From sequence record NC_041974.1: 64,000 nucleotides of DNA; one strand, 5' to 3'. Under the pieces are notes generated by a model. The model did no database searches. It worked only from the letters and a program-made list of their open reading frames with translations, and had not been told where the DNA came from. Below, one piece after another: positions 5,631 to 57,679 of this stretch. Position numbers and translations under genes: made by a program. Numbering within the stretch: the first letter of the stretch is position 1; each line of letters opens with the position of its first letter.

Positions 5631-5648
5631 CACCCTGGCTTTATGCCG
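5619..5648 (+). terminator. Hairpin followed by TTATGCCG motif
   Basis: AGCCAGGG-gtaaca-CCCTGGCT then TTATGCCG (5641-5648). Confidence 0.7.
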
Positions 5649-12513: not shown

Positions 12514-13820
12514 ATATTCGCGACTATTTAATCATGGCCTTTCGGGCAGGGGCTTACAAGCAACGCCAGTGGGTGTTGAGTGTCATGAGTATCACCCAGA
12601 CCCCGGATGGTAAATCCGTAGCAGACAGTATGATCCCGTATCAGGCACACCGCATCAACATCGGCGCGACCCTCGATTGGGCTTACTGGGACGACTTCAA
12701 CAAAACCTTTGTGCCGATTGAGGGAGTGGATGTTAACTTCCCGTTGTTTCGACCCGAGGATCAATACACACTACAACCTGGGGATTTTGCCAATGTCACT
12801 GAAGAAGTTACTACTACTTTCGGCCGTATTCTGGCTAACCATTATTATTTTATCGATGTGGTCGGTGAACGTGTCCCATTTCAGAACGTAGAATTCAACC
12901 GTGGGATGTTGGAGAAGATCTACAAGGCCCGGGTATTAGAAGATGCCCAGGACTTGCGGCGCTCTGATCCGTTCTACCTGACCGTCGATGAATTCAAACG
13001 CTCCGTGGATAATGGCTTTGCCTTGGGTGGGTTGTCGAAACTCTGTGTACCGACTGCTTGTCCGGAAACCATGTATCCGCCGAAGTTCATCATCGAGATG
13101 CGTGACCGTCTGTTTGAAGAGCACAAGGATGAGCTCAACAACCCGGTGGTCATGGGGCGTATTCAGGATGAGCTGTTAAAGCATTATCGTGAGTTCCTGA
13201 TGTCCACCCCGTCAGCCAAGTTCTTTGTGATCAAGAAGACCATCGACCAGGCCTTCAACAACATGTTCCTGACCGGCGGTATTGCCGGGGCTTTTGGCGG
13301 TAACACGGTTATTACCAACTCGCTGTACGAAGGCTGGAACCTGAAGAACTTCCCGGCGTTAGTGAATGGCTCTATCGAAGCTTCCTTTGACCGCGGTGCG
13401 GCTACAGCCGACGGTGGTGAGAAAGTGAAGATGTTGATCCGTGCCACGCAGAACATCCGTATCACCGATGATGATTGCGGGACCCAGCTCGGGGTGCCGT
13501 GGGTGATTGAAGATGCCGGCAAGGCACGCTTCATTAACTCTTACATACTGGATAAAGGTGTGACGATTCTGTTAACCCCGGAGAACATTGATAAGTTCGT
13601 CGGTAAGCCGGTCATGACCCGATCACCCAGCTTCTGTAAGAAATCCCATGGCGACTCCTGTAAGTTCTGCGTCGGGGCACATAACGCCACCAACCCACGC
13701 GGGATGTCTTCTGGCACCTCGAAGATCGGTTCTACCCTGATGTTGCTCAGTATGAAGGCAATGCACAAGGGGTCAAAAATAGACTTAATTGAATATAATC
13801 TCGATGAAGTCTTCAATTGA
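12510..13820 (+). CDS. Virion RNA polymerase beta'-like subunit, C-terminal piece (phiKZ gp80-like)
   Basis: beta' motifs: bridge-helix-like EASFDRGAATADGG, DDCGT, RSPSFC...SCKFCVG Zn site, trigger-loop-like IGSTLMLLSMKAMH. Confidence 0.9.
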   Translation: MNIRDYLIMAFRAGAYKQRQWVLSVMSITQTPDGKSVADSMIPYQAHRINIGATLDWAYWDDFNKTFVPIEGVDVNFPLFRPEDQYTLQPGDFANVTEEVTTTFGRILANHYYFIDVVGERVPFQNVEFNRGMLEKIYKARVLEDAQDLRRSDPFYLTVDEFKRSVDNGFALGGLSKLCVPTACPETMYPPKFIIEMRDRLFEEHKDELNNPVVMGRIQDELLKHYREFLMSTPSAKFFVIKKTIDQAFNNMFLTGGIAGAFGGNTVITNSLYEGWNLKNFPALVNGSIEASFDRGAATADGGEKVKMLIRATQNIRITDDDCGTQLGVPWVIEDAGKARFINSYILDKGVTILLTPENIDKFVGKPVMTRSPSFCKKSHGDSCKFCVGAHNATNPRGMSSGTSKIGSTLMLLSMKAMHKGSKIDLIEYNLDEVFN

Positions 13821-13828
13821 GGATATCT

Positions 13829-13842
13829 GAAACCTACATTAT
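13829..13842 (+). promoter_or_regulatory. Putative phage early promoter
   Basis: GAAACCTACATTAT just after RNAP stop, ahead of accessory island; resembles the AAACCTACATTAT early motif I recall for phiKZ-like phage EL. Confidence 0.65.
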
Positions 13843-13874
13843 AAGAGGGAGATATCTTTTATAAGGAACGTATC

Positions 13875-14591
13875 ATGTATGGTTTATTAATCCTCGCCTT
13901 GCCTCTGTCACCGTACGTCCACATGAGTGCGATGACTGAGGAACAATTCCAGAAACGCCTCCCGCAATTCATCAAAGACCTGGAAGCCGACATCTTCCCC
14001 AACGTCTGTTTCCAGGGTGCCTTTAACGTCAGCAACACCCGCACGGTCACTCAGCTGTTCATTCCGTGTAACGGCTTGGTGTCAGCACGGGAACTGGCGT
14101 ATGAACAGATCCGTAATATTCTTGCTAACCCAGAGAAAGAAGTCCAGCACGTCACCAACATCGGTGATTGGTTAGGTCGTCCGGGTAAGGTGATGTTTGA
14201 TAATGCGGATGGGTCTGTGGATGAGGTCGTTGTGACCGACATGTACAAATATCTGGTACACGAGAGAAGAGAGCGTTCTGTCTTTCGGTTCAGTCCGGTT
14301 GATCTCAGTATCACCGATACCGAACCATTACCAACTCACCTCTACCCGCGTGATCATTTCTACGACCAGGTCTACATCGACAAAGACGGTGAGCGTGCTT
14401 TCCTGTCTTACGGGTCGTGCGGTGAGGAAGGCTGTGCCATAGAGCCGGGCGAAGAGAAGCCCGTGCAAGTGTACGGCGTTACCTACTCGTCACTGGATGA
14501 AGCGGCCCGATGCTATAACCTGCCTGAGCAGTACGTGAAAGAACGCGTTGAATCTGACAGCCTTGAATGGCTGGAGTGGTCATATTTGTAA
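13875..14591 (+). CDS. Degenerate GIY-YIG-like protein with C-terminal NUMOD1-like DNA-binding motif (paralogue of 18137..18919)
   Basis: QKRLPQFIKDL...NVCFQGAFN resembles GIY-YIG core; TNIGDWL shared with paralogue; KPVQVYGVTYSSLDEAAR is NUMOD1-like. Confidence 0.55.
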   Translation: MYGLLILALPLSPYVHMSAMTEEQFQKRLPQFIKDLEADIFPNVCFQGAFNVSNTRTVTQLFIPCNGLVSARELAYEQIRNILANPEKEVQHVTNIGDWLGRPGKVMFDNADGSVDEVVVTDMYKYLVHERRERSVFRFSPVDLSITDTEPLPTHLYPRDHFYDQVYIDKDGERAFLSYGSCGEEGCAIEPGEEKPVQVYGVTYSSLDEAARCYNLPEQYVKERVESDSLEWLEWSYL

Positions 14592-14719
14592 AAGTATTTG
14601 GGGATGAGACGCAGAGCTGATTCCCATCTACGGTAAGTTGTTCAAGGAAGCAGCAAACCGGTTATAAAAAATGAAAGGGTTTTCGTAAGATAGTCAGTGC
14701 TCCGTACCCGAGACAATAC

Positions 14720-14917
14720 ATGACCACAAACCCGCAGTTTATTTTCGTGGCTCAGAATTCTGATGCTACACACAGCGTAGAGAAACTGGAAGTAGGACGC
14801 GATACCGATACCCAGAAGAACCTCACGGAACTTCGTAAAGGTTTGCCGTTCGACTTCTCGTTTATCATGTCTGAAGAGGCGATCTATCAACTTCGACAGG
14901 CAGGGCACATCAACTAA
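14720..14917 (+). CDS. Small hypothetical protein
   Basis: 65-aa ORF filling the gap before the tad2-like gene; weak RBS. Confidence 0.45.
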   Translation: MTTNPQFIFVAQNSDATHSVEKLEVGRDTDTQKNLTELRKGLPFDFSFIMSEEAIYQLRQAGHIN

Positions 14918-14932
14918 ACTGCTGAGGTAGTC

Positions 14933-15385
14933 ATGACGAACAAATCGGAGATCTCACACGGTGGTGGTGATCAGCCTATGGAAAAAGAGCAAAGCAACTT
15001 ATCCGTACTGGTGAACTACTCCACAGGTGTGATGGAAGGTGACCGTTTTAATTACTCGGTTGCATTGGCGCTGTTGAAAGACGGCATCAAAGTGAAACGC
15101 GAAGACTGGAAGAACGCTTTCCTGGTATTCGTCCCGGGTAGTCAGAATGTTGAACTGCCAAAAGGGTCGCCGTATGAAGTCGCACTCCACGGTAAGAAGT
15201 CCGTTGCCAATATTCGTCCGCACATCGATCTGTACACGGAGTACGGTGAATTCGAAGTCGGTTGGACCGCCAACCAGGAAGACACCAACGCCGATGACTG
15301 GATGATTGTCTTAGACAAGAACACCAATCAAGACGACAGTGCCGACGAAGAGAAAGAGTCTTCACAAGACGACTCGAAGTCATAA
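14933..15385 (+). CDS. tad2: DUF2829 / Tad2-like anti-defence nucleotide-signal sponge
   Basis: FNYSVALALLKDGIKVKREDWK...RPHIDLYTEYGEFEVGWTANQEDTNADDWMIV matches the DUF2829 pattern F..AL..LK.G.KV.R.GW...P.ID.....G....W..SQ.D..A.DW. Confidence 0.75.
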   Translation: MTNKSEISHGGGDQPMEKEQSNLSVLVNYSTGVMEGDRFNYSVALALLKDGIKVKREDWKNAFLVFVPGSQNVELPKGSPYEVALHGKKSVANIRPHIDLYTEYGEFEVGWTANQEDTNADDWMIVLDKNTNQDDSADEEKESSQDDSKS

Positions 15386-15390
15386 ACTCC

Positions 15391-15419
15391 AGGAGAGCTT
15401 CGGCTCTCCTTTTATGCCC
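15391..15419 (+). terminator. Hairpin followed by TTATGCCC
   Basis: AGGAGAGC-ttcg-GCTCTCCT TTTATGCCC. Confidence 0.75.
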
Positions 15420-15434
15420 ATTAAGGAACATGTC

Positions 15435-15794
15435 ATGAGTGAAAAGAAAGCGTTCGAAGTGGTATTGGATAGCCGTCATGAACCGTACGAGGCTTACCAG
15501 TTATTAGTGGCGCGTATCAATACGTTATTACGCACCGGTCAAGGCTACCATGAAGTGAAACTCACGAAGTGGCAGCTTTACGATAACGGTCTTCTTATCA
15601 AAGGAGATGATGATGTGCATATCTCCTTGTTGCGTCATTTCTATTACGACGAACAACGCAATACGTTTGGTGGTGGCTTCATGGCCTTTGAGATCCTGGA
15701 AGATTTGGGTCGGTACTACAAAGTGCCCGATATCACAGAAGGGATGGGCGAGAACGTTGGCCTCGTCTTCACGGTCACGGTAACCACACCATAA
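15435..15794 (+). CDS. Unknown paralogue 1 of tandem 'V.VT(A/K)W...GD' family
   Basis: RBS TAAGGA before ATG 15435; EVKLTKWQLYDNGLLIKGDDDVHISLLRHFYYD. Confidence 0.7.
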   Translation: MSEKKAFEVVLDSRHEPYEAYQLLVARINTLLRTGQGYHEVKLTKWQLYDNGLLIKGDDDVHISLLRHFYYDEQRNTFGGGFMAFEILEDLGRYYKVPDITEGMGENVGLVFTVTVTTP

Positions 15795-15800
15795 GAGGTT

Positions 15801-16169
15801 GTGATGAAACCACTCTTCGCCATGAAGTTTGATACCCGGGATGCGGGATTAGGGGATCAACTCGATCTCTTGCAATCACGGGTGAAGGCTTACTCTAAAC
15901 ACGGCACCATGATCAAAGATGTGGCGGTGACTGCCTGGGTGGTCTGTTCGGATAACATGCCAGTTGCCGGTGATGACCCTGCTCATGTCAGCATTATCCA
16001 CCGTTACCGTTACGACATCGAACAGCAGTGTGTGGTCGGTGGGGTCAGTGCCATGGATGCTCTGCGTGAGATCTGGTCGGCGTATGGTCCTGACTCTACC
16101 CTCCCACCGTTCAGCCGGATACCCGGTGCTGTCGATATGCAATTTACCTTAACTGTGTTCACTATTTAA
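15801..16169 (+). CDS. Unknown paralogue 2
   Basis: RBS GAGG; DVAVTAWVVCSDNMPVAGDDPAHVSIIHRYRYD. Confidence 0.7.
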   Translation: MMKPLFAMKFDTRDAGLGDQLDLLQSRVKAYSKHGTMIKDVAVTAWVVCSDNMPVAGDDPAHVSIIHRYRYDIEQQCVVGGVSAMDALREIWSAYGPDSTLPPFSRIPGAVDMQFTLTVFTI

Positions 16170-16182
16170 AGGAGATACCCTC

Positions 16183-16572
16183 ATGGGAGTTTCTGCTGCT
16201 GCTCGTCGTTCTAAAGAAGGGGTGTTTACCCGTAGCATTGAAGTGCGTCCAGACCACTGGAAACGGGATATCACTGATTTAGGACTGGATGTCCATAACC
16301 TGGTGTTGTGTAAACAGGAGATCGTGTCAGTGACCGTCACGGCTTGGCGGGCGTATGACGAGTGCGGGGTACTGCGCGGCAGTGCCAAAGAGTTGAAGTT
16401 AGACATTACGGAATGGTTCCTCGGCGACAAAGGCCCGGTCATTAATGATGCGATCAAACCTCTCACGTTTGCCTTCATCATTAATCAACAACGCAGCCAA
16501 CGCACGCCCTGGGTAAAAGATGTCCGCTTAGGGCTTAACCTGTCCATTGTCTACAAGAGGATTCAGCAATAA
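16183..16572 (+). CDS. Unknown paralogue 3
   Basis: RBS AAGGAG; SVTVTAWRAYDECGVLRG. Confidence 0.7.
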   Translation: MGVSAAARRSKEGVFTRSIEVRPDHWKRDITDLGLDVHNLVLCKQEIVSVTVTAWRAYDECGVLRGSAKELKLDITEWFLGDKGPVINDAIKPLTFAFIINQQRSQRTPWVKDVRLGLNLSIVYKRIQQ

Positions 16573-16916
16573 TGGAAATTGTCCACCAACTCGATCTTAG
16601 CCACGGCTGGGAACCCTTCAACCGCCTGAAAGCCGCCTTTGCCAAGAAACCCCCGGAGGCAATCTACATCACTGCCTGGGTCGCTCATGGCTATAAAGGA
16701 AACCTCATCGGTGATGAGCAAGTGGTGAAAGGGTCGTGCCAGGAGTGTCGGATTGATGTGACCCACATCTTCTTCCCCAGTCGGCCTGAGATCTTGATTG
16801 GTTTGTCGAGCTTCATTAACACCATTAATCGTGACGGGCCGGTGAAGATCCCGGCCTGGACCGGATCGATTACTCTTTGTCTTGAATTAGCGATAAGTTA
16901 TACGGATAGAATTTAA
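16572..16916 (+). CDS. Unknown paralogue 4
   Basis: TAATG coupling; AIYITAWVAHGYKGNLIGD. Confidence 0.65.
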   Translation: MEIVHQLDLSHGWEPFNRLKAAFAKKPPEAIYITAWVAHGYKGNLIGDEQVVKGSCQECRIDVTHIFFPSRPEILIGLSSFINTINRDGPVKIPAWTGSITLCLELAISYTDRI

Positions 16917-17023
16917 TCGGCATATATTCTGTCTCGTTAGCGTAAGCTCGCTAAAAACCCTTTTAAAGTTTTGTATAACAAACTATCAACTTTGTAGAAA
17001 GAAACAAATAGGAAATTAATCTC

Positions 17024-17734
17024 ATGTTGCATGAAAACTTTGAAGCCTTAGTGGCGAACATCGCCAACCAAATCAATCAGCTGGAACCCGAGGATCTGCC
17101 GTCACTGATCCTGACCAAGAGCGGGGTCTACATCAACGACAAGCGCCACGATCGCACTCGTCTACTGCTGAACCTGTTTACCCCCCAGCCCGGGCACACG
17201 CACGACGTGACCTTCGATCAAGAGCTGCAGGATGCCTTCGCTCACAACAACCTGGAGTTTATCAAAGTCGGTGAAGGGATCGCCTACGGACTACTGCGTA
17301 CCAGTATCGTTAACAACGAACCCGCGGTGTTCTGGATTCACGCCGATGTCTCCGATGATGCATCATTACTGAAGCAAGCCTGGGATATCATCACCGACCT
17401 GAAGAAGAATGCGGGTTACCCCCAGGCGTTTAACATTGACGTGCTCGACGTAAGCTGGCATGCGTTAAGCTGGGCACAACTGCTGGGGACTTTGCTTGAC
17501 CGCACTGACCCGACACGCCGGTTTCGTTTGGCAACTAACGCTGACTACGATTTTGTGTTATCCCAGAAAGCCATCACGTACTACCAGGAGACGTTGAGTA
17601 AACGTCCGATGGCACCGGTTGCTTACCTCGATGACACTAACTTGTTTAACGGTGGCGACTTTAACGACAGTGATCGCAACTGGGCAATCGCCCCGAACGA
17701 CAGCACCCGCCCTATCGTGAAGGTGTATGTTTAA
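17024..17734 (+). CDS. Hypothetical protein
   Basis: 236-aa ORF after AT-rich intergenic region, RBS AGGA. Confidence 0.75.
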   Translation: MLHENFEALVANIANQINQLEPEDLPSLILTKSGVYINDKRHDRTRLLLNLFTPQPGHTHDVTFDQELQDAFAHNNLEFIKVGEGIAYGLLRTSIVNNEPAVFWIHADVSDDASLLKQAWDIITDLKKNAGYPQAFNIDVLDVSWHALSWAQLLGTLLDRTDPTRRFRLATNADYDFVLSQKAITYYQETLSKRPMAPVAYLDDTNLFNGGDFNDSDRNWAIAPNDSTRPIVKVYV

Positions 17735-17792
17735 ATAAACACAAGCTCCAGATGGTATACTTGGAAACATTTATTGATCTGGAGCCCCAGCC

Positions 17793-18092
17793 ATGCAAAA
17801 CAATGACGATGTGGTGCCGATGCACTATAACCACAACGTGGACATGAATAACCCGCTCGACGTGGATGAAGAGGCGTTAAAGGTTCGCTTCGCCGCGCGC
17901 CTGTGCAGCTTCCTTGATCTTGCCGAGCAACTGAATAAGGATGACTTAACCCAAAACGATATCAGTCAGTTCACCGTCGGTATCGTAAACTTAGTGTGTG
18001 ACTCAATGGGCAGTAGTCCCAAACGAGACCTTTACAGGAGACAGATGGTTGACAAACTTGAACCTGTTCTGTCGAGGCATCTGATTAAATAG
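17793..18092 (+). CDS. Hypothetical protein
   Basis: 99 aa; RBS GGAG at 17781-17784. Confidence 0.65.
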   Translation: MQNNDDVVPMHYNHNVDMNNPLDVDEEALKVRFAARLCSFLDLAEQLNKDDLTQNDISQFTVGIVNLVCDSMGSSPKRDLYRRQMVDKLEPVLSRHLIK

Positions 18093-18136
18093 TCGGAGGC
18101 GTGACGGAACGCGACTACATTGCAGTATAAAAGGAT

Positions 18137-18919
18137 ATGGCTATGACGTTCGAAAAAGAAGGGGACACGTTGCACATTGTGCGACTGAGAACCAAAGGCT
18201 GGTACCACATGACGGTAACCAGCGATCCTGATGCGAGTATGGATATCGTTAACACGAACTTACGTCAGGGCACTTTTACTGATCCACTTTTACAACACCA
18301 GTACGACATCTGTAAAAAAGAGATGGGGCAAGATCCCAATCCAAATGACATCGTTTTCCACCAGTTCGTGACCACGCCAGACCAGACCGGATATCAGTCT
18401 GGCCACTGGATGATTCGTGATCACATTCGCCACGGCTATTCACTGAAGTGCCTGACTAACATCGGTGACTGGCTTTCGACCGCAGCCTATCTTTATATCC
18501 CAGACCCTGATGATAAAGAGGGTGGTGAGAGAAAATACAAAGTAACTGACTTAGGCAAGTATCTCGACAAGGAAGAGTTGTTGGGTCACTCCGACCACCT
18601 GCCGATGTATTTCTTGCCTGATGAGGAACCGGGTGACAGCTATGATGAGTTGATTGAAACCCATCGTCTTCCGCAACCTGACAAAGGTTACTCTTGTGTG
18701 GCCATCAAGAACGGTATGTCGTTTAGTTTGCTGACGTACAACAACTCCAAGCGGGTGCTTTCAGAAGAGGAAGAACTGCAAACCACAACCGTCCCAGTCA
18801 GGGCAGATGGTTTGCTGTACAGCTCCGTCTTAGAGTTGGCTATGGCTAAGAACGCCCCAGTCTGGTTTGTCTTGGAGATGCTAACCTCCGAAACCGACCC
18901 AAACTGGCATTTCGTCTAA
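18137..18919 (+). CDS. Degenerate GIY-YIG-like/NUMOD1-like protein (paralogue of 13875..14591)
   Basis: NLRQGTFTDPLLQHQYD; TNIGDWL; VTDLGKYL; PVRADGLLYSSVLE...NWHFV. Confidence 0.55.
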   Translation: MAMTFEKEGDTLHIVRLRTKGWYHMTVTSDPDASMDIVNTNLRQGTFTDPLLQHQYDICKKEMGQDPNPNDIVFHQFVTTPDQTGYQSGHWMIRDHIRHGYSLKCLTNIGDWLSTAAYLYIPDPDDKEGGERKYKVTDLGKYLDKEELLGHSDHLPMYFLPDEEPGDSYDELIETHRLPQPDKGYSCVAIKNGMSFSLLTYNNSKRVLSEEEELQTTTVPVRADGLLYSSVLELAMAKNAPVWFVLEMLTSETDPNWHFV

Positions 18920-19007
18920 CCGAGATTGGCTGTGGGGAATCCTATGCAATTGCAAAGTGTAGAGAGAACCACGGCCAATCGTAAGCTGTATCATAAGGAG
19001 AGAGATT

Positions 19008-20588
19008 GTGAGTGAAGCTAACCAGAACATCGTAGAAAGCTACGACGACCTGCCGAAGAACGCGCAGAAAGGTGATCGCTATACCGTGCGTGAAGACGCG
19101 ATCGTTTACGAACTCCAGGAAGATGGTTCTTGGAAAGACGTAGACATCAACGAACAGGTTGATCAGGAAAACGAAGAGCAGGCGCAGACCGAAGATGGTC
19201 AGCAGTCTGACACCGGCGCAACTGATCAACCTGCCTCTGATGAAGAGGGCGATGCTGATTCGTCTAAAACTGCAGCTACCGATGAAGAAGACCAGGTAGA
19301 TGACAACGGCGATGACAAGCAGACTCCGGCTGAAGAGAAGCAGGAAGAAGCAGCGCAGGCGGTTGATGAAACCCAACCACGTGATGACCCTTACGTACGA
19401 GGAGCGAACAGCGATGCCAATCCGGCACAACCTGAAGATGCGAATCAAACGCAAGATCAGACTGACGAAGCAGGACAAACTCCTGATTCTTCTGACGATA
19501 CCAACGCGCAGCAGGAAAGCACTGATGGCGTTGCGACGCAGGATGCGAAAGAGCAGGCTAACATCCCGGAAGGGGTAGATCCTGAAGAAGCGCAACCTGA
19601 CAACCAGCCACTGGCAGTAGCACCGGTTGAGCAGCCCCCTGTCCAGCACGAAGCGGTCGCGGTTGATCCTAACGCTGACCAGCCATCACCTGAAGCGCGT
19701 CCAGACAGCAAGATCGAAGAAGCAGCTGAACTGAACGCACAGAAAGAAGATGCGGCTCGTGATGAGATCGCTGAAGCCGGTGCCGATGCGCAAGCTGCGA
19801 CCTCTGCTGAGCAGACTGACGCTGGCAAAGCCAAAGAAGACGCACAGGCTGAAGGCCAGTTGCCGAACGATGGTGCTGCTGATGATGTTGCAGCCGGTAA
19901 ACCACGTAATGACCAGACCTACACCGAAGATCAGAAAGCAGCGAACACGCCAGCTCCTGAAATCGTGCAGGCTCAGGAAAACCATACGTCAGAGCCCGAT
20001 CCGGTAGTCAGCCAGGAAGAGACCCATGTGCAGAACGCCACGGACCCTGACCAGCCGACTATTATCCCGCAGGAAGCGAAGTCTGAATCACTGGCGCATC
20101 AAGCGGCTGATCCAACGCAGGAAACTGTGTTTGTTAAGCAGGATGAAAACCTGGACCCGGAAGTGCGCGTGCTGCAACAGCGCATTGAAGAGTACATCGG
20201 CAACATGGGTGTGAACGGTAAGCACGATCGCCGTGACGGTCCGAAGTATCAGGCTCGCCTGTACAAAGACCTGCACTCCATCATGGCGCTGGAGCCAGTG
20301 AAGTTCAAGCAAGTGATGGACTACCTGCTGAACCGTGTGTATGAAGAACGTGCCGGTGCTTTCTCCGACACCTATACACGCCGTTACTTTGATCAGCTGT
20401 CACCGATGCACATGCAGACCGATCGCGTGCGTGAGTTTGACAACATCCTGTCGCTGGTAACCACTGTGGGTCATTCCAAAAACCGCAGTCGTGCCCTGCA
20501 GCAGGTTGATCTGCAACGCGCCCTGAAGAACATTCAGGATGCCGGTAAGCAGCAGCGTATGGCGGCGTACTTTGATGCTCTGCGTTAA
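19008..20588 (+). CDS. Acidic low-complexity protein with conserved helical C-terminal domain (phiKZ gp81-like by synteny)
   Basis: 526 aa, GTG start with AAGGAG; D/E/Q/A/P-rich middle; strongly biased codons. Confidence 0.8.
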   Translation: MSEANQNIVESYDDLPKNAQKGDRYTVREDAIVYELQEDGSWKDVDINEQVDQENEEQAQTEDGQQSDTGATDQPASDEEGDADSSKTAATDEEDQVDDNGDDKQTPAEEKQEEAAQAVDETQPRDDPYVRGANSDANPAQPEDANQTQDQTDEAGQTPDSSDDTNAQQESTDGVATQDAKEQANIPEGVDPEEAQPDNQPLAVAPVEQPPVQHEAVAVDPNADQPSPEARPDSKIEEAAELNAQKEDAARDEIAEAGADAQAATSAEQTDAGKAKEDAQAEGQLPNDGAADDVAAGKPRNDQTYTEDQKAANTPAPEIVQAQENHTSEPDPVVSQEETHVQNATDPDQPTIIPQEAKSESLAHQAADPTQETVFVKQDENLDPEVRVLQQRIEEYIGNMGVNGKHDRRDGPKYQARLYKDLHSIMALEPVKFKQVMDYLLNRVYEERAGAFSDTYTRRYFDQLSPMHMQTDRVREFDNILSLVTTVGHSKNRSRALQQVDLQRALKNIQDAGKQQRMAAYFDALR

Positions 20589-20603: not shown

Positions 20604-20653
20604 GCATAAGGAGAGGCCTCGCGCCTCTCCTGTTTATGCCGTCTTTTTTTTTT
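20604..20653. terminator. Bidirectional terminator with GCATAA/TTATGCCG flanks
   Basis: GCATA-AGGAGAGGC-ctcgc-GCCTCTCCT-gt-TTATGCCG then T10. Confidence 0.8.
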
Positions 20654-56165: not shown

Positions 56166-56919
56166 AGAGATCAGAAAGGCGATGTGGGTTTATGATGCAT
56201 TGTCTAACAGCCACCGTGGTCTGTATGTCAAAGCAGAAGGTCCGGATGGTTCGGGTAAGTCAACCTTTGTGAAACTGTTAACGGAATGGTTACAGACACA
56301 GTTAGGTAACAGCCGGGCGGTGATGACCCGTGAAATGGGCGGCACTGCACAAGGTCGTGTCTTTCGTGAAATGGTGCTCTTCCCTAAAGAGACCCAAGAG
56401 CTGGATCTGCAAACTGAAACGCTGCTGTGTTGGGCTGATCGGGTTGAAGGTCAGAAGCAAGTTAAAGCCTGGTTAAACGCCGGGATCGCTGTGGTTCAGG
56501 ATCGCACCTACTTCTCCACCTACGCTTATCAAGGCATGCTGTACGGACAGTCACCGTTGGTAAGCAAGATTCATTCCGGCCTGGACATCATGAACGCGGA
56601 TATCGTGTTTGTGTTGGACGTTGACCCAGAAGACATTCTGGCACGCGTAGGTCGTCGTGAAGCAAAGGGTAATGAAGATCCAACGGGTAATGACCGGATG
56701 GATGTGATGACCGACCGGCAGCTAAAAGACCTCTGCTACTTTTACCGAGGTATTGAGCACCAGATGCCCGCCTGTGCCAATATCAAACAATCTAAAGTCA
56801 TCCACCTGGATGGCCGGCAAACGCAGGAGCAACTGCTGCAGGATGCCATTGTTCACTTAACCCGTTTTCTGGATGAGAAGGAACGCGAAGCAAATGACCT
56901 CTGTCGTGCTATTTGCTAA
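56137..56919 (+). CDS. tmk: Thymidylate kinase
   Basis: P-loop EGPDGSGKST; TREMGGT; QDRTYFSTYAYQG; DIVFVLDVDPE. Confidence 0.92.
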   Translation: MSQVKTMTAEEIRKAMWVYDALSNSHRGLYVKAEGPDGSGKSTFVKLLTEWLQTQLGNSRAVMTREMGGTAQGRVFREMVLFPKETQELDLQTETLLCWADRVEGQKQVKAWLNAGIAVVQDRTYFSTYAYQGMLYGQSPLVSKIHSGLDIMNADIVFVLDVDPEDILARVGRREAKGNEDPTGNDRMDVMTDRQLKDLCYFYRGIEHQMPACANIKQSKVIHLDGRQTQEQLLQDAIVHLTRFLDEKEREANDLCRAIC

Positions 56920-57205
56920 TGTGACCGAACCGCTGTTACTGAAACTCAAAGAGGTGAATGAAGCGGTTGACCTCGAGTGGTTGATTGAACAGGGTAAGAT
57001 GGTCAGTCTTATTCGTAAGAACGTCGTGCGTGCTGAACGTGACGACGGTGCGTCTGTGCATGTGATGGTGTTTCCCCGCGAGTATCTTCTGAACCTCGCT
57101 GACCGCCATGACGATGCGCAATATCAGGCCTGGTTAATCGAAAGCAAGATCAAGCCTTTTAAAGAGCATTACGCTCACGGTAGTCTCAGTATGTACGTGT
57201 ACTAA
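56894..57205 (+). CDS. Hypothetical protein
   Basis: About 103 aa, overlaps tmk stop. Confidence 0.6.
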   Translation: MTSVVLFANVTEPLLLKLKEVNEAVDLEWLIEQGKMVSLIRKNVVRAERDDGASVHVMVFPREYLLNLADRHDDAQYQAWLIESKIKPFKEHYAHGSLSMYVY

Positions 57206-57214
57206 CTTTAAGCA

Positions 57215-57244
57215 GGAGTAAGGAAACTTACTCCGCTTATGCCA
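57215..57244 (+). terminator. Hairpin followed by TTATGCCA
   Basis: GGAGTAAG-gaaa-CTTACTCC-gc-TTATGCCA. Confidence 0.75.
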
Positions 57245-57268
57245 ATTTAATTTAACCGGACGTGTATC

Positions 57269-57679
57269 ATGAAATTAGGCTTTTATTACGCATTAGTAAA
57301 GAACCATGTGTCAGGTAAACGTGAGATCTTATCTATCCAACGTGAGAGTGTCGCAGAACTCTTCCCAGTGTGTTATACGCGACTCTGTAAAGAGATTGAG
57401 GAAAACCACAGTGGTAAGTACGAAACCTCAGCATTGGCCTTTGGTGCGCTTAAAATCGAGTATCATGCAGCCAGTCAGTTGGGAACGGTATGGATTGGAC
57501 ATACCAAGGTCGGAATCATTACCCCGAAAGCCACGTTGATCTCGGTAGGCGTGGAGTATCCGATTGGGACTTTCTATTTATCCCCACCACCAAGTCTGCA
57601 GATTGGTGACCCGGAATTGATTCAGTTACGGGATGTGGTGGCCAGTGTAATTGGCGATGCAACATGGGTGATGAACTAA
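57269..57679 (+). CDS. Hypothetical protein
   Basis: 136 aa; TAATG coupling to next gene. Confidence 0.65.
   Translation: MKLGFYYALVKNHVSGKREILSIQRESVAELFPVCYTRLCKEIEENHSGKYETSALAFGALKIEYHAASQLGTVWIGHTKVGIITPKATLISVGVEYPIGTFYLSPPPSLQIGDPELIQLRDVVASVIGDATWVMN

What the first reader, a model, noticed from the sequence alone, without database searches (positions are those of the whole stretch)
15435..16916. Tandem array of four highly diverged unknown paralogues right after tad2
Seen: four coupled 114-129-aa ORFs share a core: EVKLTKWQLYDNGLLIKGDD, DVAVTAWVVCSDNMPVAGDD, SVTVTAWRAYDECGVLRG, AIYITAWVAHGYKGNLIGDE. Each core is followed by a hydrophobic beta segment (HISLLRHFYYD, HVSIIHRYRYD, KLDITEWF, RIDVTHIF). 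Overall identity is low and I recognise no family. Inference: an accordion-expanded and diversified family next to a known anti-defence gene is a strong candidate for a new class of defence inhibitors, each aimed at a different target variant, or for subunits of a heteromer.
Basis: partly seen in the sequence, partly recalled or inferred. Interest (0 to 1): 0.72.

Follow-up and report, generated by a model that had tools for sequence, protein, structure and literature searches.

The report
Four old paralogues beside phage Tad2
Four tightly packed small genes of the Erwinia jumbo phage Simmy50 are real, very old copies of one gene family with a protein fold not seen in solved structures; they sit in a fast-changing accessory region next to a Tad2-like anti-defence gene, and their function is still unknown.

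Summary
The window is the last 64 kb of Erwinia phage vB_EamM_Simmy50, a nucleus-forming jumbo phage (Agricanvirus). The four ORFs are gp279-gp282: 119, 121, 129 and 114 aa, separated by 9, 13 and -1 nt.

**Homology.** gp279/gp280 and gp281/gp282 are clear paralogue pairs. The link between the two pairs is weak but real. It rests on a profile-profile score far above shuffled controls, on reciprocal best HMM hits across the whole genome, and on independent BFVD models of gp281 and gp282 matching my gp280 model (TM about 0.6).

**Fold and distribution.** The fold is beta-alpha-beta-beta-(beta-beta)-alpha-beta and has no significant PDB match. Only six clusters exist among 1.84 billion representative proteins. 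Diverged arrays lie at the same locus in pEa_SNUABM_37 and Salmonella phage SA002.

**Age.** This is not a recent accordion. The copies are about 25% identical and under purifying selection. gp280 is swapped as a gene-sized cassette between otherwise near-identical phages, and gp282 is replaced in other relatives.

**Neighbour and function.** The upstream gene is Tad2-like at domain level. A counter-defence or host-interaction role is plausible but untested.

The parts
14933..15385 (+). gp278, a Tad2-like (DUF2829) protein of 150 aa with an acidic tail. It is the upstream neighbour, not a member of the paralogue family.
   Evidence: Pfam PF11195 E 4.5e-14, 53.2 bits against a cut-off of 25. 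phmmer hits to solved SptTad2 8wjd, ModTad2 9eib and Tad2 8v3e at E 1e-5 to 3e-5. 82-89% identical in Agricanvirus-like relatives.
15391..15418 (+). Conserved RNA stem-loop (8 bp, tetraloop) followed by a T-run and the heptamer TTATGCC. It lies between the gp278 stop and the gp279 start and is probably a terminator and/or the start of a new transcription unit.
   Evidence: MFE -14.2 kcal/mol, z -3.3. 100% pairing in 8 relatives, with compensatory changes in 5 of 8 pairs. TTATGCC occurs 18 times in the window against 6.0 +/- 2.4 expected; 11 copies directly follow a strong hairpin. The phiKZ late-promoter motif is TATG with G as the start site (PMC4666361); the link to Simmy50 is by analogy only.
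15435..15794 (+). gp279, 119 aa, family A (phrog_6658). This type is also present as the single clear copy in pEa_SNUABM_37.
   Evidence: BFVD model of the Special G orthologue matches my gp280 model at TM 0.87, E 1e-10. dN/dS 0.10 against Ea35-70.
15804..16169 (+). gp280, 121 aa, family A (phrog_6658). It is an allelic cassette: 74% identical in Ea35-70 and L005, whose flanking genes are 92-100% identical (gp276 92% in Ea35-70; all others 97-100%).
   Evidence: AF2 model pLDDT 89.1, pTM 0.82. Identity tables. dS 1.2 against about 0.1 for neighbours, dN/dS 0.16. DNA identity drops to 65-80% only across 15800-16160.
16183..16572 (+). gp281, 129 aa, basic (pI 9.5), family B (phrog_11644). It is the fastest-diverging member: 39-54% identity in relatives whose RNAP subunit is 76-91% identical.
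   Evidence: AF2 model pLDDT 80, pTM 0.72, with the same order of secondary-structure elements as gp280. BFVD model of the RAY orthologue matches the gp280 model at TM 0.64, E 5.8e-3.
16572..16916 (+). gp282, 114 aa, family B (phrog_11536). Its start overlaps the gp281 stop by one base. It is replaced by an unrelated 143-aa Cys-rich acidic protein in four relatives.
   Evidence: BFVD model of Simmy50 gp282 matches the gp280 model at TM 0.59-0.62, E 1.7e-2. Replacement shown. dN/dS 0.04.

Best explanation
gp279-gp282 are four anciently duplicated members of one small protein superfamily. The superfamily is confined to a clade of nucleus-forming jumbo phages of Enterobacterales.

**What each protein is.** Each is a soluble single domain of about 115-130 aa. 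The element order is beta-alpha-beta-beta-(beta-beta)-alpha-beta, and no solved structure matches it significantly. The genes are translated from one tightly packed unit. That unit begins after a conserved hairpin separating it from the Tad2-like gene.

**Where they sit.** They occupy a mosaic, fast-turnover accessory region downstream of an RNA-polymerase subunit gene.

**Inferred mechanism.** My best reading is that they are dispensable accessory binding modules acting on the host, most probably on host defence or signalling components. Each paralogue would have a different partner or ligand. The conserved Thr/Trp/Gly positions on strands beta2-beta3 would form the common scaffold or pocket.

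**Shown:** homology, fold prediction, restricted distribution, purifying selection, cassette exchange and replacement.

**Inferred:** expression as one unit, host-directed function, counter-defence.
For: **One family.** (sequence and profiles with shuffled controls). (independent BFVD models of gp279, gp281 and gp282 orthologues match my gp280 model at TM 0.87, 0.64 and 0.6). (same element order in the two models).

**New fold, no known family.** (no Pfam, PDB-sequence or PADLOC match for the four proteins); PHROGs places them only in three families of unknown function. (best Foldseek PDB E 0.28 and 0.019, TM at most 0.41).

**Restricted distribution.**; only six clusters among 1.84 billion representatives.

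**Real genes.** dN/dS 0.04-0.16.

**Accessory, mosaic setting.**
- gp280 is a gene-sized cassette that differs between near-identical genomes.
- gp279 is missing in L008 and L009; gp282 is replaced in L004, L009, L010 and L011; there is an extra gene in L011.
- gp281 is 39-54% identical where the RNAP subunit is 76-91% identical, and gp283 is mosaic.
- The neighbours include a Tad2-like gene and, in relatives, an HD_4 hydrolase-like gene.
- Tad2 proteins are sponges for the Thoeris signal 1''-3' gcADPR (bioRxiv 10.1101/2023.05.01.538930).

**Older diverged arrays at the same locus.** pEa_SNUABM_37 and SA002.
Against: - There is no functional evidence of any kind.
- There is no similarity to any known anti-defence protein or defence component.
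- The Tad2 adjacency is limited to the Agricanvirus-like lineage.
- A conserved terminator-like hairpin separates the Tad2-like gene from the array. The TATG-containing motif after it resembles a phiKZ late promoter, which would mean nvRNAP-dependent rather than immediate-early expression.
- The four proteins were not among those listed in the RAY and Deimos-Minion crude-lysate mass spectrometry table, as far as the excerpt I read shows (PMC6690015).
- My two AF2 models used one merged alignment, so their mutual likeness is not independent. The BFVD matches are independent.
- I could not read model coordinates, so the position of the conserved residues in 3D is unknown.
Confidence: 0.4

Rival explanations
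1. The four proteins are subunits of one hetero-oligomeric assembly of paralogous subunits. The assembly would have a role in the phage's own cycle, for example in nucleus-associated, assembly or replication functions. The conserved residues would be interface positions.
For: Tight packing and a one-base stop/start overlap favour co-translation in fixed ratios. The order is conserved in all named Agricanvirus genomes checked. The gp280-type and gp281-type genes co-occur in all seven Agricanvirus-like loci examined. All four are under purifying selection.
Against: Gene content varies. gp279 is absent in L008 and L009. gp282 is absent or replaced in four loci. There is only one clear family-A copy in pEa_SNUABM_37. 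A gp280 allele only 74% identical works in an otherwise identical set of partners. The family is not part of a widely conserved gene set.
Confidence: 0.2
2. They are small nucleic-acid-binding or regulatory proteins built on a ferredoxin-/RRM-like beta-alpha-beta-beta-alpha-beta core. They would act on phage or host RNA or DNA.
For: The element order is compatible with a ferredoxin-like core carrying an inserted hairpin. The only recurring weak PDB matches are Y-family DNA polymerases: E 0.02-0.2 and TMq up to 0.41 for gp281, and TMq 0.38 for gp280. gp281 is basic, pI 9.5. A Trp is invariant on a beta-strand.
Against: All PDB matches are below significance. gp279, gp280 and gp282 are acidic to neutral. 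There is no Pfam or PDB-sequence hit to any nucleic-acid-binding family. I could not verify strand order in the sheet.
Confidence: 0.1
3. The shared core is a chance motif: two unrelated pairs of paralogues happen to lie side by side.
For: Cross-pair BLASTP is not significant. The first hhalign runs on small alignments gave only 7-18% probability.
Against: With larger natural alignments the score is about 9.6 sd above the column-shuffled controls, and none of 397 controls reaches it. HMM hits are reciprocally best across the genome. Independent BFVD models of gp281 and gp282 match the gp280 model at TM about 0.6 and Foldseek probability 1.00.
Confidence: 0.04

Closest known systems
PHROG families phrog_6658, phrog_11644 and phrog_11536 (all 'unknown function')
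   Same: These are the same proteins: gp279 and gp280 hit phrog_6658, gp281 hits phrog_11644, and gp282 hits phrog_11536, at E 1e-59 to 1e-88.
   Different: PHROGs keeps them as three separate families with no function. Here they are joined into one superfamily by profile comparison, shuffled controls and structure matches.
Tandem small genes of Erwinia phage pEa_SNUABM_37/48 and Salmonella phage vB_SalM_SA002 (QKE54603-QKE54605)
   Same: They lie at the same locus, downstream of the same 436-aa RNAP subunit gene, as tandem genes of 103-124 aa. The 115/124-aa type matches the family profile with hhalign score 32.5, E 2.8e-5, against a shuffled maximum of 22.5. BFVD hits of 103, 115 and 108 aa from one unnamed virus match the gp280 model at TM 0.56-0.69, and these sizes equal the SA002 genes.
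   Different: They are much more diverged. The 103-aa type is not detectable by sequence. There is no Tad2-like gene at the locus. The identification of the BFVD accessions with SA002 rests on sizes only.
Tad2 (DUF2829) and other phage signal sponges (Tad1, Acb2)
   Same: They are small soluble phage proteins. A Tad2-like gene is the immediate upstream neighbour. A conserved aromatic plus polar residues would suit a nucleotide pocket (speculative).
   Different: There is no sequence or structure similarity. Tad2 is described as an N-terminal helix followed by an antiparallel five-stranded sheet forming a homotetramer, which is a different element order. Ligand binding was not tested.
Gene accordions (recent tandem amplification under selection, described for poxviruses; from my own knowledge)
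   Same: A tandem array of paralogues in a viral genome, possibly under host pressure.
   Different: The copies are about 25% identical and old. No near-identical copies exist and no copy-number change occurs among close relatives. Change is by cassette exchange, loss and replacement.
Ferredoxin-like beta-alpha-beta-beta-alpha-beta domains, including domains of Y-family DNA polymerases
   Same: Same order of the main elements. These are the only recurring weak Foldseek PDB matches.
   Different: TM is at most 0.41 and E at least 0.019, so nothing is significant. There is an extra beta-hairpin between beta3 and alpha2. Sheet topology was not verified.

Membership tests
One homologous family comprising gp279-gp282 | Significant sequence similarity within and between the two pairs | tested here: met
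   Within pairs: E 1e-13 and 5e-8. Between pairs: hhalign 34.7 against a shuffled maximum of 23.6 in 397 controls. Reciprocal best non-self HMM hits in the whole genome.
One homologous family comprising gp279-gp282 | Same fold | tested here: met
   The gp280 AF2 model (pLDDT 89) matches independent BFVD models of gp279, gp281 and gp282 orthologues at TM 0.87, 0.64 and 0.6. The gp281 model has the same element order. No experimental structures exist.
Tad2 / DUF2829 (applies to neighbour gp278 only) | DUF2829 domain above Pfam's gathering score and similarity to solved Tad2 proteins | tested here: met
   53.2 bits against a cut-off of 25. 8wjd, 9eib and 8v3e at E about 1e-5.
Tad2 / DUF2829 (applies to neighbour gp278 only) | Homotetramer with pockets that bind 1''-3' gcADPR; inhibition of Thoeris | not testable with these tools
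   Described for SPO1 Tad2 in 10.1101/2023.05.01.538930. Pocket residues were not compared here. gp278 has extra N- and C-terminal segments.
Tad2 / known anti-defence proteins (applies to gp279-gp282) | Sequence or structural similarity to a characterised anti-defence protein | tested here: not met
   No Pfam, PADLOC or PDB-sequence hit. No significant Foldseek PDB hit.
Gene accordion (recent tandem amplification) | Near-identical tandem copies and copy-number differences among close relatives | tested here: not met
   Paralogue identity is 24-27%. There are four genes in each named Agricanvirus genome whose gene table was read. Differences appear only among distant relatives, by loss or replacement.
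Ferredoxin-like fold | beta-alpha-beta-beta-alpha-beta with an antiparallel sheet of order 4-1-3-2 packed on two helices | tested here: inconclusive
   The element order is compatible. Coordinates were not readable, so strand order is unknown. Foldseek hits are weak.
Phage accessory / anti-defence island | Variable gene content and mosaic alleles at a fixed locus between conserved genes, with at least one recognised anti-defence gene | tested here: met
   Identity tables and gene maps. Tad2-like gene. This is a contextual criterion, not proof of function.

The most novel reading that the evidence does not exclude
The four genes are a new fold family of phage counter-defence proteins. They would be either sponges for immune signalling molecules or stoichiometric inhibitors of defence proteins, and they diversified long ago into paralogues with different targets. 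The gene-sized exchange of gp280 alleles between otherwise identical phages would reflect matching to different host defence variants.
Probability: 0.3. Interest if true: 0.7.

Novelty: new member of a known kind. Interest (0 to 1): 0.45.

Why it matters
Jumbo nucleus-forming phages carry hundreds of genes of unknown function. This result merges three 'unknown' PHROG families and several unassigned genes into one superfamily. The superfamily has a confidently predicted fold that matches nothing in the PDB, and it occupies a fixed locus that changes by cassette exchange, loss and replacement.

That pattern, together with the Tad2-like neighbour, marks the family as a reasonable candidate for host-interaction or counter-defence proteins in phages of a plant-pathogenic bacterium. 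If that proves true, it would add a new structural class to the known phage counter-measures. If not, it remains a well-defined new fold family for structural study.

Tried and rejected
- **Sigma-70 promoter and terminator scan of 13800-19100.** Fewer sites than in shuffles; uninformative for a phage with its own RNA polymerases.
- **The search for related loci.** The merged alignment failed because it has no conserved 7-10-column stretch. With the single-family alignments, IMG/VR returned only phage RAY.
- **PDB sequence search with the family profile.** No hit even at E 10.
- **PADLOC.** Nothing for the four proteins.
- **Foldseek against PDB with both models.** Nothing significant.
- **A fifth paralogue.** The BFVD hit A0A173GFH3 is the orthologue of Simmy50 gp71 (record 56913-57278, outside the window). 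It has only TM 0.52, E 0.078, and it did not appear among the family HMM hits (E up to 5) in the whole-genome ORF scan. It is not counted as a member.
- **Unrelated proteins in the array.** The 143-aa Cys-rich protein that replaces gp282, and the 162-aa protein of L011, show no relation to the family.
- **Literature.** The RAY core-genome paper does not mention gp273-gp277 or Tad2 in its main text; supplements were not read. The 2025 sponge-diversity preprint has no Erwinia or jumbo-phage entries.
- **Model coordinates.** They are not available to scripts, so conserved residues could not be mapped in 3D.
Full report
**Identity of the window**

The region 14700-17100 is 100% identical to Erwinia phage vB_EamM_Simmy50 (NC_041974, 271,088 bp; genus Agricanvirus). 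Window coordinate = record coordinate minus 207,088, so the window is the last 64 kb of the genome. The genome encodes a nuclear shell protein and PhuZ and split multisubunit RNA polymerases. It is therefore a nucleus-forming jumbo phage of a bacterium, and its near-twin RAY was characterised as such (PMC10299810). The four ORFs are annotated as hypothetical proteins gp279-gp282.

The genes are:
- gp279: 15435-15794, 119 aa
- gp280: 15804-16169, 121 aa
- gp281: 16183-16572, 129 aa
- gp282: 16572-16916, 114 aa

The quoted peptides are present. Gaps between the genes are 9, 13 and -1 nt, each with an AGGAG-like site. The upstream gene gp278 (14933-15385) is Tad2-like: Pfam PF11195 at 53.2 bits against a cut-off of 25, and hits to three solved Tad2 proteins at E about 1e-5.

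**Are the four homologous?**

*Within pairs:* clearly yes. gp279/gp280 give BLASTP E 1e-13. gp281/gp282 give E 5e-8 and hhalign probability 94%. PHROGs places gp279 and gp280 in phrog_6658, gp281 in phrog_11644 and gp282 in phrog_11536.

*Between pairs:* BLASTP finds nothing, and small profiles gave only 7-18% probability. I then collected natural relatives from public phage genomes and metagenome contigs. This gave profiles of 15 sequences (family A) and 12 sequences (family B). Four lines of evidence follow.
- hhalign gives score 34.7, E 2.3e-5, over 53 columns covering beta1-alpha1-beta2-beta3. The 397 column-shuffled controls gave mean 11.9, sd 2.4, maximum 23.6, and a reversed control gave 10.1.
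- Among all 1106 six-frame ORFs of the genome, the family B HMM's best non-self hits are gp279 (E 1.3e-3) and gp280. gp281 is tied for second among family A's non-self hits.
- Within the set of array-region proteins, each family HMM picks up members of the other family ahead of the unrelated neighbours.
- In 27 sequences one column is Trp in 27/27, the column two positions earlier is Thr in 25/27, and a later one is Gly in 25/27.

**Structure**

AlphaFold2 on a 22-row alignment gives a confident gp280 model (pLDDT 89.1, pTM 0.82). Its elements are E2-10, H16-32, E37-49, E52-57, E68-71, E76-79, H83-94 and E110-120. The gp281 model (pLDDT 80, pTM 0.72) has the same order. These two models share one alignment, so their likeness is not independent.

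Independent evidence comes from Foldseek against BFVD with the gp280 model:
- gp279 orthologue: TM 0.87, E 1e-10
- RAY gp281 orthologue: TM 0.64, E 5.8e-3
- Simmy50 gp282: TM about 0.6, E 1.7e-2

All have probability 1.00 and rank ahead of everything unrelated.

Against the PDB, neither model has a significant match. The best for gp280 is E 0.28. The best for gp281 are Y-family polymerases at E 0.019 or higher and TMq at most 0.41. The element order fits a ferredoxin-like core with an inserted hairpin, but I could not read coordinates to check sheet topology.

**Distribution**

The family is tiny.
- tblastn against 50,697 phage records finds only Agricanvirus genomes, AH06 and pEa_SNUABM_37/48.
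- Word-indexed searches of 5.8 billion clusters give a handful of hits.
- A full HMMER pass over 1.84 billion representatives gives six clusters.
- IMG/VR holds only RAY.

At the fold level the family reaches further. pEa_SNUABM_37 and Salmonella phage SA002 carry tandem genes of 103, 124/115 and 108 aa downstream of the same 436-aa RNAP subunit gene.
- The 115/124-aa type matches the family profile (score 32.5, E 2.8e-5; shuffled maximum 22.5).
- The 108-aa type is borderline, and the 103-aa type is undetectable by sequence.
- BFVD hits of exactly 103, 115 and 108 aa from one unnamed virus match the gp280 model at TM 0.56-0.69. I infer that they are the SA002 proteins, but could not confirm the accessions.

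**Evolutionary behaviour**

*Age.* Both A-family types and the gp281 type occur in every Agricanvirus-like lineage examined, and gp282 occurs in three lineages, so this is not a recent accordion.

*Selection.* All four genes are under purifying selection between Simmy50 and Ea35-70, with dN/dS of 0.10, 0.16, 0.07 and 0.04.

*Array content across relatives*:

| Array content | Genomes or loci |
|---|---|
| 279-280-281-282 | Simmy50, L005, AH06 |
| 280-281-282 | L008 |
| 279-280-281 plus an unrelated 143-aa Cys-rich protein | L004, L010 |
| the same plus a 162-aa gene | L011 |
| 280-281-143 | L009 |
| one gp279-type copy | pEa_SNUABM_37 |

*Divergence.* gp281 is 39-54% identical where the neighbouring RNAP subunit is 76-91% identical. 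gp283 is mosaic: 37% in AH06 but 93% in the AH06-like L008.

*Cassette exchange.* This is the most striking feature. Ea35-70 and contig L005 are 92-100% identical to Simmy50 in every neighbouring protein, but only 74% identical in gp280. The dS for gp280 is 1.2, against about 0.1 for neighbours. DNA identity falls to 65-80% exactly across the gp280 ORF and nowhere else. This is a gene-sized allelic cassette exchanged by recombination.

**Transcription signals**

An 8-bp GC-rich stem-loop lies between the gp278 stop and the gp279 start (15391-15410). It pairs in all 8 relatives, with compensatory changes in 5 of 8 pairs. It is followed by a T-run and the heptamer TTATGCC.

That heptamer occurs 18 times in the window against 6.0 +/- 2.4 expected. 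Eleven copies directly follow a strong hairpin, and several lie 20-35 nt upstream of a start codon. In phiKZ, late promoters of the non-virion RNAP have the motif TATG, with the G as the start site (PMC4666361).

By analogy only, the element may be a terminator plus a late-type start. That would make gp279-gp282 (and possibly the genes up to the next such element at 20634) a unit separate from the Tad2-like gene.

**Interpretation**

Shown:
- one old, diverged family
- a confidently predicted fold not found in the PDB
- restriction to one phage clade
- purifying selection
- location in a mosaic accessory region with cassette exchange, loss and replacement

Inferred: an accessory, host-directed role. 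The context fits counter-defence. The neighbour is Tad2-like, and Tad2 proteins sequester the Thoeris signal (10.1101/2023.05.01.538930). An HD_4 hydrolase-like gene also sits in the same region in relatives.

However, nothing links the four proteins themselves to any defence system. The Tad2 adjacency is lineage-specific, and a conserved hairpin separates the genes. An obligate four-subunit heteromer is made less likely by the variable content and by the divergent gp280 allele working in an identical background. A smaller complex, for example of the gp280-type and gp281-type proteins that always co-occur, is not excluded.

I put about 0.85 on the single-family and new-fold part, and about 0.35-0.4 on the host-directed or counter-defence part.

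**Expression data**

Crude-lysate mass spectrometry of RAY and Deimos-Minion lists RAY gp273, which by gene order is the Tad2-like orthologue. It also lists RAY gp281, by gene order the orthologue of Simmy50 gp286. The excerpt of the table that I read does not list the four paralogues (PMC6690015). This is weak negative evidence only.

All proposed follow-up is descriptive. The consensus lines printed by the alignment tools were ignored.

Noticed in passing
window 15391-15418; also near 5641, 20634, 29292, 57237, 63111 and 63899 (+ strand) and 58191, 29255, 22861 and 21756 (- strand): A recurrent intergenic module: a strong GC-rich hairpin followed directly by a T-run and the heptamer TTATGCC. 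The heptamer occurs 18 times against 6.0 +/- 2.4 expected, and 11 copies follow a hairpin. Several lie 20-35 nt upstream of a start codon. It contains TATG, the phiKZ late-promoter motif (PMC4666361), so it may be a combined terminator and nvRNAP start.
   Followed up: partly
window 15800-16160 (gp280) compared with L020 (Ea35-70) and L005: Gene-sized allelic cassette. DNA identity is 65-80% across gp280 only and 92-100% on both sides. dS is 1.2 against about 0.1 for neighbours. Simmy50, RAY and Mortimer carry one allele; Ea35-70 and metagenome contig L005 carry another.
   Followed up: yes
window 13875-14591 (gp276) and 18137-18919 (gp285): A second pair of diverged paralogues (both phrog_6749; BLASTP E 1e-7, 29% identity) flanks the region. 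gp276 has a weak C-terminal match to the I-TevI DNA-binding domain and a homing-endonuclease model (E 0.0045 and 0.0013). gp276 is 92% identical in Ea35-70, where most neighbours are at least 97% identical. In AH06, L008, L009 and L010 its slot holds a gene of about 216 aa with no detectable similarity to gp276 (tblastn finds only the gp285-like paralogue, 23-25%); in L011 it holds a 206-aa HD_4 gene.
   Followed up: partly
window 17024-17734 (gp283): Mosaic gene immediately after the array. It is 37% identical in AH06 but 93% in the otherwise AH06-like contig L008, and 91% in L010 where neighbours are about 75-85% identical.
   Followed up: partly
L004:5805-6236, L009:5432-5863, L010:5573-6004, L011:5884-6315; L011:5399-5887: In four relatives gp282 is replaced by an unrelated, very acidic 143-aa protein with 8 Cys (weak zinc-binding-domain matches). 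L011 has an additional unrelated 162-aa gene.
   Followed up: partly
L011:2922-3542, L012:2922-3542, L003:5276-5902: A gene with an HD_4 domain (PF13328, E 3e-10 to 4e-12) sits in the same variable region in some relatives. It takes the gp276 slot in L011 and L012, and lies within the array in pEa_SNUABM_37. It may be another host-manipulation gene.
   Followed up: no
window 19008-20588 (gp286): A 526-aa protein with a long, acidic, low-complexity N-terminal half, which produces a strong AT skew (0.226) at 18-20 kb. By gene order it is the orthologue of RAY gp281, one of the most readily detected proteins in RAY crude-lysate mass spectrometry (PMC6690015).
   Followed up: no
Simmy50 record 56913-57278 (gp71; outside the window, locus L016:7114-7479): The BFVD model of its Deimos-Minion orthologue (A0A173GFH3) weakly resembles the gp280 model (TM 0.52, E 0.078). 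No sequence signal supports a relationship.
   Followed up: partly
window 15339-15434: The orthologue of gp279 in phage Rebecca is annotated as 151 aa, which matches the upstream GTG start here at 15339. That start overlaps the gp278 end and the conserved hairpin. Relatives align from the ATG at 15435, so the long form is probably an over-extension.
   Followed up: partly
L003:5895-7285 and L021:4700-5759: pEa_SNUABM_37/48 and Salmonella phage SA002 carry their own tandem set of small genes (103, 124/115 and 108 aa; pEa_SNUABM_37 also has a 118-aa ORF) at the syntenic locus. The set is distantly related to the family by profile and, probably, by BFVD structure matches.
   Followed up: partly
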